DNA of 64,000 bases, taken from Octopus sinensis (lineage: Eukaryota). Location: contig NC_043004.1 in the NCBI RefSeq assembly GCF_006345805.1, forward strand, positions 45,074,001 through 45,138,000, given 5' to 3'. Positions within the stretch are counted from its first letter, which is position 1. Every line of letters starts with the position of its first letter. Under the pieces are notes generated by a model. It worked only from the letters and a program-made list of their open reading frames with translations. It did not search any database and was not told the origin of the DNA. The position numbers were made by a program, and so were the translations under genes. Below, piece by piece: positions 3,069 through 50,640 of this stretch.

Positions 3069-5014
3069 TAGGATGTTAAAGCAAGGAGATACAAACAAAT
3101 ACACACAGGGTCTTCATTCACCTTATGCCTACCAAACCCCTTGTGGCTTTGGTCAGTTTGGAGCTGTATTAGAAAATTCTTGTCCACGGGGCTGCATAGT
3201 GAGACCAAACTTGGTACCATGTGGTTTCAGAGCTAATAAGCTTATTTCTTAACTACAAAGCCAGCAAAATCTTGAGCAACACCATCATCTATCCGTCATT
3301 TTAAATCTGGGTTTTGCCCCTGTCAACGGGGGTGGCCGACTACCTTACTTTCGCAGTCCATTTACCTGAAATACCAGATTTATAAATTTTTCTATTCCTA
3401 ACCTTTCCCTCTAGTTGTTTTAACCCACCAAAGGTTAACTTTATAGCGACTATAAAATTTATTTTCCATCTTTTTCTCTTCATCATCAACTAAAAAAAAT
3501 TATGTGGTGTAATTTTAATGATCTGTGCCAGATTAAAATAAATTTGGTGAAAACATATATCTGGATATTTCTTCTCTTCAGGGATATCTAAAACTTAAGC
3601 TTTCTTTATAAAAATGTTTTTCATTTTATTGCTTGCAAAAATTCTTTTCTTGATTTTGTGTCAGATTTGTTAGTGATTGCTAAAGAAAGAAAATGTATAG
3701 CGACAGCAGCAAAACAGAATCATTCAAAATAAATAAACTGCCAAATAAATAGATAAAACAAGCCAACTAAGACATCATTGGTGTTTTGTAAGCTCATTGT
3801 AAATACATTCATAGAAATTGCTTGATTTGCTAAAACACTGTGGAATGTTTTGGTAGATGGTAAAACCATCATCTACCAGCATTCACTCCACCCACACTCT
3901 GTCTGTCTGTTTACCTGTCTGTCTGTTTACCTGTCTGTCTGCGAGTGTGTGTTTACTTGTCTGTCTCACCCTCTCTCTCTGTCTATTTCTCTCCTCGTCT
4001 CTCTATCACTTACTCATTCTCTCACTCATTTTTAATCTTTCTCTATTCCTTAATCTATTACCCACTCATGTTATTAACCCTCACTCCATCTTCACTCAGC
4101 TGAGTAGTTTCTGCTCATTTACTGTTGAGGAGCGAAGACATAAATGGCAAAGATATCTGCTTTTTACTTTTGTTTTCATTTTAATATTATCGTTTTTTTT
4201 CTTCTGTGTGTGTGTGTGCATGTGCATGTATGTATGTTCGAAGTTTTGTATGTGTGAATTTGTGAATTTGCATCATGTGTGTGAGTGTGTGGGACAGATG
4301 TCTGTGAGTAGATATATATGCACAGGCATGGGTGTACAATATTTATATATGTATATGTGTGAATATTTCTGCATATGTGTATGTTTCTGAATAGGTAACT
4401 CTATCTATACATTTGAGTGTATGTGGGTATTATCCTGTATATTTGTATGTATTTGCATATTCTTGTATGTGTTTAAGTAGCTGTATGTTTGTATATGTAT
4501 GCATGTGAATATTCCTGTGTTTTTGAATGTGTACATATCACCGTACATTTGTATATATGCTGGTAGTTCAATGCTCTTGCGCATTTGTGTGAGTATATTC
4601 TTGTATTTATATATGCTAGTAGCAGTATGTCTGTAAATGTATCTTTGTAAGCCTGTCGACGTAGGGGTGGGGCATTCTTTGTTTGTTCATTGACAGTATT
4701 TACTTACAGCAGCAATCTGTGGTTAATGAGTTCTGGCAATGTAGATGACATTTGCTAGAATGTTTCACAGTTGGTGCCACCTCTGCTGCTGATACCGTTG
4801 CCACCCTCAACTCTATTACTACTGCACCCTCCTCTCTTGACTGTAAATAGAGAGACAGACAGATACACAGGGAAAAAGTCAGATGCAAACGGATGGATGT
4901 GTTAGTAAGTATACTGATGTATATGGCAACCATAGTGGGTGGATGGTTTATTTGTACATGTATACTAAAGGCATGCCAATGTAGTTGTTGTTGTTTAGCT
5001 CCAAGTCAGCCTTC

Positions 5015-5325
5015 AGGTTAATTTCTGTAATTTTGTAGGAAGCAATCCGTCCACCGTCATTAATTTTTGTCTGTTTCTTAAACAATGATTTAACAGTACC
5101 CCGATTTTCAAAATTAGTTTTCAATCCCTCAAAATATTTGATAGGCTTATTGACTATTTCTGGGTGTTTTCTTCTCATCTGATCAAAGAGTTGAGAGGGC
5201 TTCAAGGCTTCATTTGACAAAGATCGATGACGCATGATACAAAATGGTTGCTTTGGGTCTGTAGAGTTCTTGATAAAACCATATTGCAAATACTCATCAA
5301 TATTCTGTTGAGCCTGCCATAAAAA
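5015..5325 (-). pseudogene. hAT (Charlie/Buster-type) transposase N-terminal remnant with BED-type zinc finger
   Basis: ORF 4948-5289 reads QYGFIKNSTDPKQPFCIM..LSNEALKPSQLFDQMRRKHPEIVNKPIKYF, matching the YGF..P.C..C...LSNE.MKPS.L..H...KH motif. Degenerate Cys/His; truncated by another repeat. Confidence 0.8.
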
Positions 5326-11265: not shown

Positions 11266-11628
11266 ATTGAAATCGAAATCGAAATCGCTCAAAAATCAGT
11301 GGAAATTGTAGTTGTGATACCAGTGCCGGTGGCACGTAAAAGAACCATCCGAACGTGGCCATTGCCAGTGCCGCCCTGACTGGCCTCCGTGCCAGTGACA
11401 CTTAAAAAGTACCAACCGATTGGCCATTGTCAGCCTCACCTGGCACCGTGCCCAAGGTACGTAAAAAGTACCCACTACACTCACAGAGTGGTTGGCATTA
11501 GGAAGGGCATCCAGCTGTAGAAACACTGCCAGATCAGACTGGGCCTGGTGCAGCCTCCTCGCTTCCCAGACCTCAGTCGAACCATCCAACCCATGCTAGC
11601 ATGGAAAGCGGACATTAAACGATGATGA
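11266..11628 (+). mobile_element. RTE LINE 3' end
   Basis: GC-rich ~70-bp repeats, GGAAGGGCATCCAGCTGTAGAAAC core, CGGACATTAAACGATGATGAT tail; same as the 3' end of the RTE at 19141. Confidence 0.8.
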
Positions 11629-19140: not shown

Positions 19141-20437
19141 ATCATCATAGTTGTCATTTAACTTCCGCTTTCCATGCTGGCATGGGTTGGACAGTTTACT
19201 GAAGGCTAGCGGGCCAGAAGGCTGCACCAGGCTCCAATCCGATCTGGCAATGTTTCTACAGCTGGATGCCCTTCCTAATGCCACCCACTCCGAGAGTGTA
19301 GTGGGTGCTTTTTACTTGCCACTGGCAACAATCACACTCGAATACTGCTTTTTACATGACACCAGCATGAGACCAGTCAGGCGGCACTGGCATTGACCAC
19401 ATTCGAATAGTCTTTTTTATGTGCCACCAGCACAGGTGCCAATCAGGCGGCCATGACAACGACTTTTTTTGATTCGACAGGTTTTTGCAAGCATAGTTTA
19501 TTGCCCAATGATTGAAGAGTACTCTTAAATGGGCTGGTTATGCTGCACTGACATAGGCCATGCTTATGGTCTCACGTGGTTTGTAGAGTCTTCTCATGCA
19601 CAGCATATCTCCAAAGGTCTCAGTCAATTGTCATTGCTTTGGTGATGCCCAACGTTTGAAGGTTGTGCTTCAACACATCATCCCAGGTCTTCCTGGGTCT
19701 ACCTCTTCCACACCAAATCTGATGCTTCTTATATCTAACTCTTCTCTCATGGCGCTTACTTTCTGTCGCTTATGCACCCTGATGTTATACATCCATTGGA
19801 GCATACTAGTTTCATTCCTTGCAAGCTTACAAATGTCCTCAGCAGTCACAGCCCATGTTTCACTGCCATGTAGCATGGCTGTTCGCACACATGTGTCATA
19901 CAGTCTACATTTTACTCTGAGCGAGAGGCCCTTCGTCACAAGCAGAGTTAGGAGCTCTCTGAACTTTTCCCAGGGTATTCTTAATCTAGCAACTACACTC
20001 TCAGAGCAACCACCCCCAATACTGACTTGGTCACCTAGGTAAGAGAAACTATCAACTACTTTTAGTTTTTCACCCTGGAATGTGACGGAAGCTGTTTTCT
20101 GCCCATTTTTAGTGTTTACTCCCCCTAGCATTCTCTGCATACAAAAACTATTTTCCTAGTTAGCCTTCCCTTGATATTGTTGCTCCTCTTATGTGTCCAG
20201 AGCTTACACTGGGTACATCTTATAGAGTTTCTACATACGCCTTTTCTACAGATTGAACAGGGCCATCTACCTGAAGGGATTTGTGGTTTGTCTGCCTTCC
20301 TACTTATTAAGACTTTGGTTTTTGCTAGATTGACTCTAAGGCCCTTCAATTCTAGACATTGCTTATACATCCATGCTGCCATCTCTTCAGTTATCCGGCC
20401 ATTGGAAAAATGCCCTTCTTTTGTTGCCTTACCATTT
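19141..20437 (-). mobile_element. 5'-truncated RTE-clade LINE (RT C-terminal half plus 3' UTR), frameshifted
   Basis: Translations KGLRVNLAKTKVL, EKLKVVDSFSYLGDQV, GLSLRVKCRLYDTCVRTAMLHGSETWAVT are typical of RTE RT. 3' UTR ends in (GAT)n. (TA)n on both flanks. Confidence 0.92.
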
Positions 20438-20679
20438 TTATCTATATATATATATTTATATATATATATAATATATATATACACACACATTTTTATGCAT
20501 AAACATCTCTCTCTCTCGAAATATACATATATACATATATATATATATATTTATATAGATAACTCTGTGTGTGTATATATATGCATATATATATATATTT
20601 TGGCATAAATCTCTGTATGTGTATGTATATATAGACACACACACACACACAGTGAGAGAGGTTCATGCATGAAAATACG

Positions 20680-21896: not shown

Positions 21897-22048
21897 GCGA
21901 GCTGGCAGAAACATTAGCACGCCAGGCGAAATGCGTAGCCGTATGTCGTCTGTCGTTACGTTCCGAGTTCAAATTCCACCGAGGTCGACTTTGTCTTTCA
22001 TCCTTTCGGGGTCGATAAATTAAGTACCAGTTACGCACTGGGGTCGAA
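21897..22048 (+). mobile_element. SINE family B, young CpG-rich, 3' truncated
   Basis: GAGCTGGCAGAAACATTAGCACGCC..GAGTTCAAATTCCACCGAGGTCGACTTTG..GGGGTCGATAAATTAAGTACC. Confidence 0.8.
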
Positions 22049-22710: not shown

Positions 22711-22789
22711 GTATGTCTGTAATATTCCATCCTTTCATTTATGTGTTCCACCTTGTCTATTTCACTGATTCCTGAGAATTTGTATGCTT

Positions 22790-23375
22790 AGCAGCATTTT
22801 TCCAGTCATTGTGTTCTGAGTTAAAATTCTGCTGAGCTTGACGTTACCTTTGTAATTAATTAGTCCCCTCCTCCACAATTTCAGGCTTTGTGCCTATTGT
22901 AGAAAGTATTATTATTGTTATTATTATTATTATTATTATTGTTGTTGTTGTTGTTAAGGTGGTGAGGAGATAGTCATTAGCACACTGGGCAAAATCCTTA
23001 GTAAGATTTTGTCTATCTTTACATTCTGAGCACAAATTCTGCTGAGGTTGACTTTACCTGTCATTCTTTCAGGATCAATAAAATAAGTACCAGTTGAAAA
23101 CTGAAGCCAGTCTAATCAACTACCCACCCCCACTCAAATATCAGACCTTGTGGCTGTAGTAGAAAAAATTATTGGGTGGATTGGTAGTGTTGTTAGTGTT
23201 GGTGTGCATTCTGATTTTGTTCATTCTGAGTTAAGATCCCACAATGGTCAGCTTAGCCTGTCATTATTTCGAGCTTAACAAAATAAAGTATGAAAGAAGT
23301 ACTGGGGTTAATATAATCAACTAATGCTGCCAGCTATCTGTAAAATTTCTGGCTTTGTGTCAAAATTTGAAATTG
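22790..23375 (+). mobile_element. Three degenerate head-to-tail SINE family B copies
   Basis: TTCTGAGT..AAATTCTGCTGAG motif at ~22815, ~23025 and ~23225, each followed by an (ATT/GTT)n tail. Confidence 0.65.
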
Positions 23376-23439
23376 TTGTTGTTGTTTTGCTCCAATGTCT
23401 TTGAAAAAAAATTTATGTTTCTTTGTTTTTCTCTTTGCA

Positions 23440-23446
23440 GGTAAGT
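23440..23446 (+). promoter_or_regulatory. Candidate recursive splice site / ratchet point
   Basis: tttatgtttctttgtttttctctttgcAG|GTAAGT: consensus 3'ss directly followed by a perfect 5'ss. Confidence 0.5.
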
Positions 23447-24051
23447 CTATCTCATCTTTGAAAAAATAAACTGGATACACAATACATTTTATTTTTAACA
23501 AATTCCTGCTTTGGGCATTTTTTCTTTGTCAAAGGTAAGAAAGTTAATAGATATAATGTTACTTTTCATTTCTATATTTCATCTTAATTTTCTTGAGATA
23601 TTTTATTCTTGTTTTCATCATGATTTTGTGTGATTTTTTTTCCTCCCATCATTTTTACACATAAGAATTGAGTCCATGATTAGTGACATATCTAAATATT
23701 AAAAAAAAAGTGATTACTTTACACAAAACACAAGGTAAGAATATTCATCCCTCATGCTTCTTCCCATTATGACAAATCTTTATTATGTTGACATATAATG
23801 ATAGGGATGGAGATTAAAGCTAGTCACTCAAAGTTGATAGGGTAGATTAAGAACTGTGACATTGTTACTCTTTCCAAAAGTATTTGCAGAAGTCTTTGGG
23901 ATATCTGTCTTCTGGAAATTGGGCTTGATTTGATAGAAGTTTCCCTGTATTACAATATTTAACAGAAAACACACACAGAAGCACACCACTTCTCCTTTTC
24001 ACGCTTGTGCACCCATCCAATGCCCCCCCCCCCCGGCTAAAGATAAATGAA

Positions 24052-24388
24052 TCTCTATATATATAAATGGCAAAATGTCTGCGTGTGTGTCCTTTATACA
24101 AATCCACAATTTTTCAGCTAGAGGGCTCACACTTTCTATGGTCATTCAAAACCGTCCAAGGGTGGTCGTGCACATCTTTATATTTCCCCAGTCACCCCGC
24201 AAAGCCATTAAAAAATCAATAGAAGTGACTTTTTTGTGAATTTTCTAACCAAAACCCAATCAAAATGCCGGCTAGCTGTATGTGATTGGTCAGAGATTTA
24301 GACAGTATTCGCGTGTATGTGCACACACACACAGTTGTATACGCATGCACTAGCACTATGACCCGGCAACGCCGGGTCATAGTGCTAG
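24052..24388 (+). mobile_element. Non-autonomous Helitron
   Basis: A|TCTCTATATATATAAA 5' end; 3' GC hairpin ending CTAG|T; A|T insertion site, no TSD. Confidence 0.8.
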
Positions 24389-24984
24389 TTGATGTATAAA
24401 ATAAAGGAACATGTAGATTTGATTAACATAAATAAAGAAAAATTCCAAAAGCCTGGTAAAGCAGTGCACAAGATGTCATCTGTTCGTATGTGTTTGTACA
24501 TATATGTACAGTGTAATTACCAATTAAAGATGTGATTTTCTCTGTTCTTATTCTTGTTGTCTTATACTCTGAATTTCTTGAAATTCTTCTAAGTGATATT
24601 TGAGGTTACTTGTCATACATGAAGAATCACCTTAGATGTTAACTTGCATTTATTGGTATTTTATTGATTGATATAGTTAACCAAATTTACTTAACACTGG
24701 GTGTTTTTATTGCTGTCTGCCTGGGTTTATTAATCCTTCTTACTTCTTCTCTGTGCATACATACATGTGTGTGTGTGTGTGTACATAGATGAAAAAAAAC
24801 ATTCAACAGATGTTGTGGGGGTCAAATGTTTGTATTGGTGTTGACCTAAGTGTATACTGAGTCAAACTGTTAATACAAATACGGACTTCTGAAATGGAGG
24901 AATTAGTCAATCTGAGGCTATAGCAGAAGAAACTTGCACATGGTCTTGACACAGTGGGATCAGACTCACAACTTTTTGGTTATA

Positions 24985-34790: not shown

Positions 34791-35155
34791 CATCATCATC
34801 ATCGTTTAATGTCCGCTTTCCATGCTAGCATGGGTTGGACGGTTCAACTGGGGTCTGGGAAGCCCGAAGGCTGCACCAGGCCCAGTCAGATCTGGCAGTG
34901 TTTCTACAGCTGGATGCCCTTCCTAACGCCAACCACTCCGTGAGTGTAGTGGGTGCTTTTTATGTGCCACTGACACAGGTGCCAGACGAGGCTGGCGAAC
35001 GGCCACGCTCGGATGGTGCTTTTTACGTGCCACCGGCACGAAGGCCAGGCGAGGCTGGCAATGGCCACGATCGGATGGTGTTTGATACGTGCCACCGGCA
35101 CAGAGGCCAGGTGATGTGGTGCTGGCTACAGCCACGTTCGGATGGTTCTCTTATG
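34791..35155 (-). mobile_element. RTE LINE 3' end with ~3 internal tandem units
   Basis: Young, CpG-rich; CATCATCATCATCGTTTAATGTCCGC tail complement. Confidence 0.85.
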
Positions 35156-37245: not shown

Positions 37246-37415
37246 TTGAATAATAGTAGTAGTAGTAGTAGTAATAATAATGAGGGTAATGATAATAATA
37301 ACAACAATAATAATAAGGGTAATAATAATAATGATAATAATAACAATAATAATGAGGGTAATAATAATAATAATAATAATAATAAAATGATATTAGTAGT
37401 AGTCAATTACATCAA
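37246..37415. repeat. (AAT)n/(AGT)n microsatellite
   Basis: Direct reading. Confidence 0.9.
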
Positions 37416-37419
37416 CTCT

Positions 37420-37568
37420 AGTGCTTGACTGGTACTACTTAATTTATCGAGCCCGAAAGGATGAAGGTGAATTTGACCTTGGTGAAATTTGAACTCAGAA
37501 CATAAAAGATGGGTGAAATTCCACTAAGCATTTTGCCGACATGTTATCAATTCTAACAACTTGCCACC

Positions 37569-42377: not shown

Positions 42378-42590
42378 TAAGCTGGCAGAATCATTTGTGT
42401 GTTGGACAAAATGCTTTGTAGCATTTCTTCCAGCTCTTTATGCCATGAATTCAAATTCCACTGAGATTGACTTTGTCTTTCATCCTTATGGAGTCCATAA
42501 AATGTGTACCAATCAAGTACTGGGGTCAGTGTTATTGCCTAAACCCCTCTCCCCAAATTTCAGGCCTTGTGCTTACAGTAGAAAGAATAA
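42378..42590 (+). mobile_element. SINE family B
   Basis: AAGCTGGCAGAATC..AATTCAAATTCCACTGAGATTGACTTTG. Confidence 0.7.
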
Positions 42591-43572: not shown

Positions 43573-43849
43573 GTTATTATTATTAACCTACTTAAAAGGA
43601 AACACAGACACCACAATGGCAGATTTTGTCATACCCACACACAACACACCACCAGCACACATACTCAGTTTTAGAATAACTCGTGGGAACTATAAGGTAA
43701 TAAAGAACAAATATCCATGTGATGTTGGGTTGCTTGGGAAAAGTTTCTCGAAAAATCTTTACAAGAATCTGGTGGAAATACTGATACAAAAGCATAAGTG
43801 AGCCACCCCACCAGACAACAGTGGGATTGATGGTATTAAGTAACCACTA

Positions 43850-44000
43850 CTTGCATTCTGTCTAAGTTGGAAATGACCACTGAGCTCAAATTTGCCTTTC
43901 ATTCTTCCAGGGTCAAGTACTTACCTGTCAAGTACTGGGGTTGATATTATCAACAAACTCCTTCCCTGAAAATTTTAGGACTTGTGCGCATAGTAGAAAG
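43850..44000 (+). mobile_element. SINE family B, degenerate
   Basis: TTTGCCTTTCATTCTTCCAGGGTC..AAGTACTGGGGTTGAT. Confidence 0.55.
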
Positions 44001-44431
44001 GATTAATGTTATCATGATTAGGGTAGTAAAACTGCAGAATTTTTAGTGCATTGTGTAATGTCTTGTGGTACTGGATTTAGCTCTTGACATTCTTCAGTTG
44101 TCGTGAGAATACTGTATTTGGAGTAATAAAAATAAAACAAAATAGATGTGATTGCCATGGCTAGAATGATATCGATCATAGGTGTTGTTGATTATAGCTG
44201 CTCTTGGATTAAATAGTAACAACAACAAAAGCAAGCTTAGCTATTTATGTGTCATTTGCTAATCATGGTATTCATGAAAGGGTGATTACCAGTATTGGTT
44301 AATGATTAAGGAATTACAATTTCTTAAAGGAAAGTATCAAAGTTAGCGAAATTGCTTCAACTAAGAATTGAACATGGGTGGCTGATTTTCATTGATTGCA
44401 AGCATATCTCCACAGGTCTGTTAAGTACTAT

Positions 44432-50324: not shown

Positions 50325-50640
50325 ACCAGCACCGCCCTGACTGGCCTCCGTGCCGGTGACACGTAAAAACCACCATCCGATCATGGCCTTTGCCAGCCTC
50401 GTCTGGCCTCCATGCCGGTGGCACATAAGAGAACCATCCAATCATGGCCGTTTGCCAGCCTTGTCTGGCACGTAAAAAGCACCCACTACACTCTTGGAGT
50501 GGTTGGCGTTAGGAAGGGCATCCAGCCGTAGAAACATTGCCAAATCAGACTGGACCTGGTGCAGCCTTCTGGCTTCCCAGACCCCAGTTGAACCGTCCAA
50601 CCCATGCTAGCATGGAAAGTGGATGCTAAATGATGATAAT
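50325..50640 (+). mobile_element. RTE LINE 3' end
   Basis: Tandem units, core and GATGATAAT tail. Confidence 0.82.

What the first reader, a model, noticed from the sequence alone, without database searches (positions are those of the whole stretch)
23411..23740. Textbook recursive-splice (ratchet) site with a stop-filled cryptic exon
Seen: a ~30-nt pyrimidine tract ends in ttgcAG|GTAAGT (23440/23441), a zero-length exon. A second GTAAGA donor at 23535 would define a 94-nt exon with stops in all three frames (TGA, TAA, TAA). A third GTAAGA lies at 23735. Established: Drosophila ratchet points and vertebrate RS-exons in long neuronal introns have this layout (3'ss plus regenerated 5'ss, then a PTC-bearing cryptic exon). 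Inference: this intron may be removed stepwise. I am not aware of recursive splicing being characterised in cephalopods.
Basis: partly seen in the sequence, partly recalled or inferred. Interest (0 to 1): 0.75.

Follow-up and report, generated by a model that had tools for sequence, protein, structure and literature searches.

The report
Candidate recursive splice site, unverified
The sequence really does contain a near-perfect "splice in, then splice out again" signal of the kind flies and vertebrates use to remove very long introns in steps. I could not show that it lies in an intron of a plus-strand gene or that it is ever used.

Summary
The letters are as described: a T-rich tract, ttgcAG|GTAAGT at 23440/23441, AAG|GTAAGA at 23535 and 23735, and stops in all three frames of the 94-nt interval.

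The composite site is by far the strongest acceptor-plus-donor juxtaposition on either strand of the window.
- TT at -5/-6
- a TTTAT branch candidate at -26
- a 107-nt AG-free zone upstream
- a first donor stronger than the downstream one

Such a site is expected about 0.002-0.006 times per 64-kb strand. That still allows a few hundred chance copies in a genome of a few Gb, or roughly 4-25 if a nearby donor is also required. The stop-filled exon is uninformative, because about 70% of random 94-mers here have stops in all frames.

What defines recursive splicing could not be tested:
- No coding exon was recognised on either strand.
- The host gene and its strand are unknown; a T>A skew on the plus strand is only a hint.
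- No RNA data or orthologous sequence were reachable.

The site sits just 3' of three head-to-tail SINE copies.

Verdict: a good, untested candidate (about 0.4). If real, it is a new member of a known kind.

The parts
23412..23416 (+). Candidate branch-point motif TTTAT (yUnAy), with the branch A at 23415, which is -26 from the 3' splice site
   Evidence: It is the only yUnAy match in the 100 nt upstream of the acceptor. Fly recursive lariat branch points lie at -36..-21. This is a motif-level match only.
23334..23438 (+). AG-exclusion zone: no AG dinucleotide for 107 nt upstream of the acceptor AG
   Evidence: AG occurs about once per 18.5 nt in the window (3456 AG in 64 kb), so such a gap is unusual. 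Part of it is T-rich SINE tail.
23411..23436 (+). Polypyrimidine tract (22/26 Y; 18/20 Y at -23..-4; TT at -5/-6)
   Evidence: The TT at -5/-6 criterion comes from Duff et al..
23437..23446 (+). Composite acceptor|donor gCAG|GTAAGT. CAG|GTAAGT is the full 9-nt consensus that pairs with the U1 snRNA 5' end. This is the putative ratchet point at 23440/23441.
   Evidence: acceptor rank 1 and donor rank 2 on the + strand, and the best joint AG|GT on either strand. The AGGTAAGT-U1 complementarity of RS sites is stated in PMC8797253.
23441..23534 (+). Putative cryptic RS-exon, 94 nt (94 mod 3 = 1), with stops in all frames. It contains AATAAA at 23465-23470.
   Evidence: Fly RS-exons are short (about 50 nt), out of frame and poorly conserved.
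23532..23540 (+). Downstream donor AAG|GTAAGA that would define the RS-exon. It is weaker than the ratchet-point donor.
   Evidence: 10.5 versus 12.9 bits with my matrix. This fits the donor-competition rule for skipping.
23732..23740 (+). Second downstream donor AAG|GTAAGA, an alternative end giving a 294-nt exon
22784..23397 (+). Three head-to-tail diverged SINE copies with (ATT)n/(GTT)n tails, lying immediately upstream. The last tail, (GTT)4, ends about 25 nt before the pyrimidine tract.
   Evidence: The copies are 62-75% identical to other copies at 856-970, 21912-22032, 42406-42584, 43816-44010 and 37395-37540(-).

Best explanation
A recursive splice site (ratchet point) with its cryptic RS-exon, inside a long intron of an unidentified plus-strand gene.

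Proposed mechanism; every step is inferred, none is shown:
1. U2AF and U2 recognise the TTTAT branch at -26, the T-rich tract and CAG.
2. U1 on AAG|GTAAGA at 23535 (or 23735) defines the 94-nt (or 294-nt) exon by exon definition.
3. The upstream exon is ligated to 23441, which regenerates a consensus GTAAGT donor at the junction.
4. That stronger donor outcompetes the downstream GTAAGA. The cryptic exon leaves with the next intron segment and never reaches the mRNA.
For: What the sequence shows:
- The composite site is the strongest acceptor-plus-donor on either strand.
- It is expected only about 0.002-0.006 times per 64-kb strand.
- TT at -5/-6 and a branch candidate at -26 match fly ratchet points.
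- There is a 107-nt AG-exclusion zone.
- A consensus donor lies 94 nt downstream and is weaker than the regenerated donor, as the donor-competition model requires.
- The interval is out of frame.
- Three of 8 AGGTAAG on the + strand cluster here.

Context:
- No coding exon was recognised anywhere in the 64 kb, which is compatible with a very long intron.
- T exceeds A on the + strand by 6.9% in unique sequence, in 13 of 16 4-kb bins. That is the direction generally seen on the coding strand of introns (PMC5786239).
Against: - There is no evidence that the locus is transcribed, or on which strand.
- Most of an octopus genome is reported to be intergenic (PMC9476566), if this is a cephalopod.
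- The T>A skew could have other causes, such as replication.
- A few hundred such composite motifs are expected by chance in a Gb-scale genome.
- In the mouse only about 20 of 4.8 million sense AGGT sites are recursive.
- The site abuts a cluster of SINEs whose T-rich tails make strong pyrimidine tracts common. Fly ratchet points, by contrast, are ultraconserved.
- Conservation could not be examined.
- My splice-site matrices are approximations, not trained on this organism.
Confidence: 0.4

Rival explanations
1. Chance juxtaposition in DNA that is not transcribed in this orientation (intergenic, or antisense to a gene). A T-rich stretch next to a SINE cluster happens to be followed by CAGGTAAGT, and AT-rich flanks happen to contain two GTAAGA.
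For: - About 250 such sites are expected by chance in a 2.7-Gb genome.
- The finding was picked by eye from a scan of many windows.
- The upstream 600 nt are SINE copies with T-rich tails.
- No gene, exon or RNA family was found in the window.
- Octopus genomes are reported to be mostly intergenic.
- Stops in all frames are what random sequence gives.
Against: - The full configuration (tract, YAG|GTAAGT, AG-exclusion zone, branch motif at -26, consensus donor 94 nt downstream) is expected only about 4-25 times genome-wide.
- The site outscores every other AG|GT in 128 kb of strand by 9 bits.
- Consensus donors cluster here.
- The T>A skew favours + strand transcription.
Confidence: 0.3
2. An ordinary, non-recursive exon. 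Here 23441-23534 (or to 23734) would be a real alternative, poison or non-coding exon (UTR or lncRNA) that is included in some transcripts and merely begins with GTAAGT. Alternatively it is an 'RS-like cryptic exon' as described in the mouse.
For: - A strong acceptor and two consensus donors give a well-defined exon.
- In the mouse, 46 of 84 junction-supported AGGT candidates turned out to be unannotated exons, and 22 RS-like cryptic exons were found.
- Expressed RS-exons also exist in flies.
Against: - In RS-like cryptic exons the regenerated donor is weaker than the downstream one. Here it is the stronger, which predicts skipping.
- The interval has no open frame and no relatives.
- An exon that starts with the perfect U1 consensus by accident is itself rare.
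Confidence: 0.2
3. An intronic cluster of U1 snRNP binding sites that acts without splicing. It would suppress premature cleavage and polyadenylation (telescripting), for example at the AATAAA at 23465-23470, or retain the transcript.
For: - There are three consensus 5' splice-site motifs within 300 nt, one of them a perfect 9-nt U1 match.
- An AATAAA lies 25 nt downstream of the first.
- Telescripting is established in human, mouse and Drosophila (abstract of PMC5499120).
Against: - It does not explain the maximal acceptor, the AG-exclusion zone or the branch motif directly upstream.
- AATAAA is common here (62 copies in 64 kb) and is not depleted relative to composition.
- It also needs + strand transcription, which is unproven.
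Confidence: 0.05

Closest known systems
Drosophila intronic ratchet points (zero-nucleotide exons; Hatton 1998, Burnette 2005, Duff 2015, Pai 2018, Joseph 2018/2021)
   Same: - Juxtaposed (Y)n-NCAG|GTAAGT
- TT at -5/-6
- A branch motif in the -36..-21 window
- A short, out-of-frame cryptic exon closed by a second donor that is weaker than the regenerated one
- No coding exon nearby
   Different: - Fly sites are defined by junction reads, saw-tooth coverage, lariats and deep conservation. None of these is available here.
- The fly cryptic exon is about 50 nt; here it is 94 nt.
- This site abuts SINE copies, whereas fly sites are ultraconserved.
- The organism, presumed to be a cephalopod, has no reported recursive splicing.
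Vertebrate RS-exons in long neuronal genes (Sibley 2015; mouse cortex set in PMC8797253)
   Same: - AGGTAAGT complementary to U1, and a pyrimidine-rich 20 nt upstream
- Exon-definition layout with a stop-containing RS-exon
- A very long exon-free surrounding
   Different: - Vertebrate sites sit in introns >51 kb of genes >294 kb, mostly the first intron, and are few (about 20 in mouse cortex). Host gene and intron are unknown here.
- Motif alone is a weak predictor in vertebrates.
TE-derived cryptic (pseudo-) exons, such as Alu exonisation, where a repeat's T-rich tract supplies the polypyrimidine tract. This comparison rests on my own knowledge, not on a tool result.
   Same: A strong acceptor lies directly next to SINE tails, and the exon is non-coding and stop-filled.
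   Different: - The tract and AG|GT lie about 25-40 nt beyond the recognisable end of the SINE, and are not part of the family consensus in the other five copies.
- The tract shows no clear 3-nt periodicity.

Membership tests
Intronic ratchet point (Drosophila type) | Juxtaposed strong 3' and 5' splice sites around AG|GT, with a prominent pyrimidine tract and a GTAAGT-like donor | tested here: met
   18/20 Y, CAG|GTAAGT, and the top joint score on both strands. The matrices are my own approximations.
Intronic ratchet point (Drosophila type) | TT at positions -5 and -6 (196 of 197 fly sites) | tested here: met
   Positions 23435-23436 are TT.
Intronic ratchet point (Drosophila type) | A usable branch point about 21-36 nt upstream | tested here: inconclusive
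   TTTAT with its A at -26, and a 107-nt AG-free zone. This is a motif only; use as a branch point needs lariat reads.
Intronic ratchet point (Drosophila type) | Lies in a long intron (>11 kb in flies) on the sense strand of the host gene | tested here: inconclusive
   - No coding exon was recognised in 64 kb on either strand.
- The T>A skew favours +.
- The host gene was not identified.
- The big homology searches are invalid because their control failed.
Intronic ratchet point (Drosophila type) | Exon-to-ratchet junction reads, saw-tooth read density and recursive lariats | not testable with these tools
   No RNA-seq access. Exact look-ups of 20 window ORFs found no contig of this locus.
Intronic ratchet point (Drosophila type) | The motif is far more conserved than control AGGT sites | not testable with these tools
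   No related genome is held. The metagenome scan for the 34-mer gave 0 hits.
RS-exon (exon-definition model, flies and vertebrates) | A downstream 5' splice site delimits a short cryptic exon | tested here: met
   AAG|GTAAGA at 23535 gives 94 nt, and a second at 23735 gives 294 nt.
RS-exon (exon-definition model, flies and vertebrates) | The regenerated donor is stronger than the RS-exon donor, so the exon is skipped | tested here: inconclusive
   GTAAGT scores above GTAAGA, 12.9 versus 10.5 bits in genomic context. The true -3..-1 of the regenerated site come from the unknown upstream exon.
RS-exon (exon-definition model, flies and vertebrates) | The exon is frame-shifting or carries premature stops | tested here: met
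   94 mod 3 = 1, with stops in all frames. About 70% of random 94-mers of this composition share this, so it does not discriminate.
RS-exon (exon-definition model, flies and vertebrates) | The host is a long, typically neuronal or developmental gene | not testable with these tools
   The host gene is unknown.

The most novel reading that the evidence does not exclude
Recursive splicing operates in a lophotrochozoan with a repeat-bloated genome, and this ratchet point was born next to, or from, SINE insertions. On this reading, transposon-driven intron expansion creates the very sites that let the spliceosome remove the expanded intron in steps.
Probability: 0.1. Interest if true: 0.6.

Novelty: new member of a known kind. 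Interest (0 to 1): 0.35.

Why it matters
Recursive splicing is documented in insects and vertebrates. I found no report for molluscs or cephalopods. [quoted passage not shown] It would also give a concrete locus for RT-PCR and minigene tests. As it stands, this is a well-formed prediction and not a discovery.

Tried and rejected
1. **Host gene by homology.** Three homologous-protein searches used concatenated ORF translations: + strand, - strand, and splice-flanked short ORFs plus transposon controls. All gave zero hits. The control RT fragment was also missed, yet it has 5015 relatives, the best 72-82% identical, when searched alone without a word index. These three negatives are therefore void.
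3. **Pfam** on all non-repeat ORFs >=35 aa, both strands: nothing.
4. **PDB phmmer** on 12.2k aa of ORFs >=30 aa with protein-like composition, both strands: nothing below E=0.07.
5. **Rfam** at gathering thresholds, looking for intronic snoRNA or miRNA that would give the strand: nothing.
6. **Exact look-ups** of 20 window ORFs, to fetch contigs of the locus or of relatives: none in the collection.
7. **Exact 34-mer** around the site in metagenome contigs: 0 hits.
8. **Organism check.** The best RT relatives carry only UniParc ids or anonymous Logan runs, so 'cephalopod' stays unverified.
9. **Is the site part of a repeat?** 23096-24979 is single copy in the window, the SINE family consensus ends before the tract, and no terminal inverted repeats enclose it. 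Rejected.
10. **A 200-nt tandem duplication** to explain the two GTAAGA (17-nt match at spacing 200): no wider similarity. Rejected as chance.
11. **AATAAA strand depletion** as a transcription-strand signal: not informative.

Full report
**Observation**

The region reads aaaaaaaatttatgtttctttgtttttctctttgcag|gtaagtctatc, with the bar between 23440 and 23441.
- GTAAGA starts at 23535 and at 23735, each preceded by AAG.
- The 94 nt from 23441 to 23534 contain TGA, TAA and TAA in the three frames.
- The tract 23411-23436 is 22/26 pyrimidine, and the 20 nt at -23..-4 are 18/20.

**How unusual is it?**

I scored sites with simple weight matrices that I wrote from general metazoan consensus. They are not trained on this organism.
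- The acceptor is rank 1 of 3456 AG and the donor rank 2 of 4133 GT on the + strand.
- The joint score (15.8 + 12.9 bits) exceeds every other AG|GT on either strand by about 9 bits.

Three estimates of the chance rate agree:
- Markov chains of order 1, 3 and 5 trained on the window give 0-0.006 sites per 64-kb strand with at least 17/20 pyrimidines followed by YAG|GTAAGT.
- Among the 560 distinct permutations of AGGTAAGT, only the true motif on the + strand and two decoys on the - strand occur behind such a tract. That is 0.002-0.004 per motif per strand.
- So the site is unexpected within this window, at p of order 0.005.

At about 0.003 per strand-window, a genome of about 2.7 Gb would still hold roughly 250 by chance. 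The finding was also selected by eye from a scan.

A consensus donor 30-150 nt downstream has p of about 0.015 for AGGTAAG and about 0.1 for GTAAG, from the counts. Requiring it lowers the chance expectation to roughly 4-25 per genome.

Three of the eight AGGTAAG on the + strand lie within 300 nt here (P about 0.0035, noticed after the fact).

The 'stop-filled' property is not evidence. With this base composition about 70% of random 94-mers have stops in all three frames.

- Positions -5 and -6 are TT, as in 196 of 197 Drosophila ratchet points.
- The only yUnAy motif in the 100 nt upstream is TTTAT, with its A at 23415 (-26). That is inside the -36..-21 range of mapped fly recursive branch points.
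- No AG occurs for 107 nt upstream of the acceptor.
- CAG|GTAAGT is the full U1-complementary consensus, and the same enrichment distinguishes mouse RS sites from other intronic AGGT.
- The regenerated donor GTAAGT outscores the downstream GTAAGA. Under the donor-competition model this predicts that the cryptic exon is skipped.
- The interval is out of frame (94 mod 3 = 1), as fly cryptic RS-exons generally are. It is longer than their typical ~50 nt.

**Surroundings**

The window is 35% G+C and repeat-rich. 27% of it matches elsewhere in the same window, and there are 89 tandem-repeat rows.

Directly upstream lie three head-to-tail diverged copies of one SINE family (about 22784-22956, 22975-23200 and 23215-23397).
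- Each ends in an (ATT)n/(GTT)n tail.
- Other copies are at 856-970, 21912-22032, 42406-42584, 43816-44010 and 37395-37540(-).
- The family consensus ends before the pyrimidine tract, which starts about 14 nt after the last tail remnant.
- The tract shows no clear 3-nt periodicity. Derivation from the tail is possible but not shown.

The site and the 1.5 kb downstream are single copy in the window, and no terminal inverted repeats enclose them.

**Is it in a plus-strand intron?**

This is the crux, and I could not settle it.
- *Pfam.* All non-repeat stop-to-stop ORFs of at least 35 aa gave no hit on either strand.
- *PDB.* A phmmer search against all PDB sequences, which uses no word index, covered every non-repeat ORF of at least 30 aa with protein-like composition (12.2k aa, both strands). 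Nothing scored below E = 0.07.
- *Rfam.* Nothing was found.
- *Large protein collection.* Three searches with concatenated ORFs returned nothing. I must discard them, because the embedded control was also missed. That control is a LINE reverse-transcriptase fragment at 19673-20155(-). Searched alone, it has 5015 relatives, the best 72-82% identical.

The fair statement is that no recognisable conserved coding exon lies in the 64 kb. That fits either a very long intron or intergenic DNA.

Indirect hints:
- T exceeds A on the + strand by 6.9% in unique sequence, in 13 of 16 4-kb bins. T>A on the coding strand of introns is described as general in eukaryotes (PMC5786239), but other processes can also skew composition.
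- CpG observed/expected is 0.29 throughout the window. In octopus, methylation is reported to be confined to the bodies of a subset of broadly expressed genes, and most of the genome is intergenic (PMC9476566). I do not know the genomic baseline for CpG depletion, so I draw no conclusion from it.

**Transcripts and conservation**

Neither could be examined.
- Twenty ORFs of the window, ten of them within 1 kb of the site, are absent from the protein collection by exact look-up.
- A 34-mer spanning the site has no match in metagenome contigs.
- The other sequence collections on hand hold viral, prokaryotic (bacterial and archaeal), phage or plasmid sequence, so none could contain this locus.
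The best relatives of the RT fragment carry only UniParc identifiers or anonymous run names.

**Weighing the explanations**

At the sequence level every testable criterion of a ratchet point with an RS-exon is met. The full configuration is rare enough that chance copies should number in the tens per genome at most.

If recursive splicing is as common in this lineage as in flies (hundreds of sites), most such configurations in sense introns would be real. If it is as rare as in mouse cortex (about 20 sites), chance copies and ordinary unannotated exons would compete on equal terms. Of 84 junction-supported mouse candidates, 46 were simply unannotated exons.

Transcription and strand are unknown, and a SINE cluster sits next door. 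My weights are:
- about 0.4 for a functional recursive site
- about 0.3 for a chance motif in DNA not transcribed in this sense
- about 0.2 for an ordinary, poison or non-coding exon, or an RS-like cryptic exon
- about 0.05 for a non-splicing U1-binding cluster

**Novelty**

The mechanism is well known. I found no paper linking it to cephalopods or molluscs. If validated, this would be a new member of a known kind in a new phylum, with a possible transposon-birth angle. It is a clean, cheap target for RT-PCR or a look at total RNA-seq. On present evidence it remains a prediction.

Noticed in passing
window 22784-23397: Three head-to-tail copies of one diverged tRNA-like SINE family. Each starts right after the (ATT)n/(GTT)n tail of the previous copy, which suggests insertion into microsatellite tails. 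Other copies lie at 856-970, 21912-22032, 42406-42584, 43816-44010 and 37395-37540(-).
   Followed up: partly
window 19673-20550 (- strand): LINE reverse-transcriptase fragment in two ORFs. It has 5015 relatives in the representative library, the best 72-82% identical (UniParc UPI0006951AAC and UPI0006955845). A 55%-identical relative sits on Logan contigs of runs SRR11869379 and SRR11869381.
   Followed up: partly
window 4948-5289 (- strand): This ORF looks by eye like a hAT-transposase-derived protein (motif ...LKPSQLFDQMRRKHPE...). It had no Pfam or PDB hit, so the assignment rests on memory only.
   Followed up: no
whole window: CpG observed/expected is 0.25-0.31 in every 8-kb bin, while GpC is 1.03. 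That is strong, uniform CpG depletion. It could mean long-term germline methylation, perhaps of a gene body, but the genomic baseline is unknown to me.
   Followed up: partly
whole window, + strand: T exceeds A by 5.6% overall and by 6.9% in unique sequence, in 13 of 16 4-kb bins. G exceeds C by 1.4-2.5%.
   Followed up: yes
window 2381/2382 (+ strand): This is the second-best AG|GT on the + strand: tttcatctcttatctctAG|GTAAGG. It lies 21 kb upstream of the main site, close to the mean fly recursive segment length (18 kb). Positions -6/-5 are CT, not TT. It may be coincidence.
   Followed up: no
window 34952-35111 and 50341-50469: Tandem repeats of 62 nt (2.1-2.6 copies, 85% match) lie inside copies of a second interspersed repeat family. 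That family has ORF-like translations GLDGSTGVWEARRLHQAQSDLAVFLQLDALPNANHS... at 11299, 19151, 33201, 34829, 44721, 50445 and 59355, on both strands.
   Followed up: no
window 24344-24394: Near-perfect palindrome: 24-nt arms, 92% complementary, with a 3-nt spacer.
   Followed up: no
window 23465-23470: A canonical AATAAA lies inside the putative RS-exon, 25 nt after the perfect U1 site.
   Followed up: partly
method (versus 57): Long concatenated queries to the word-indexed protein search return nothing even for a segment that has thousands of relatives. Negatives from such queries should not be trusted.
   Followed up: yes
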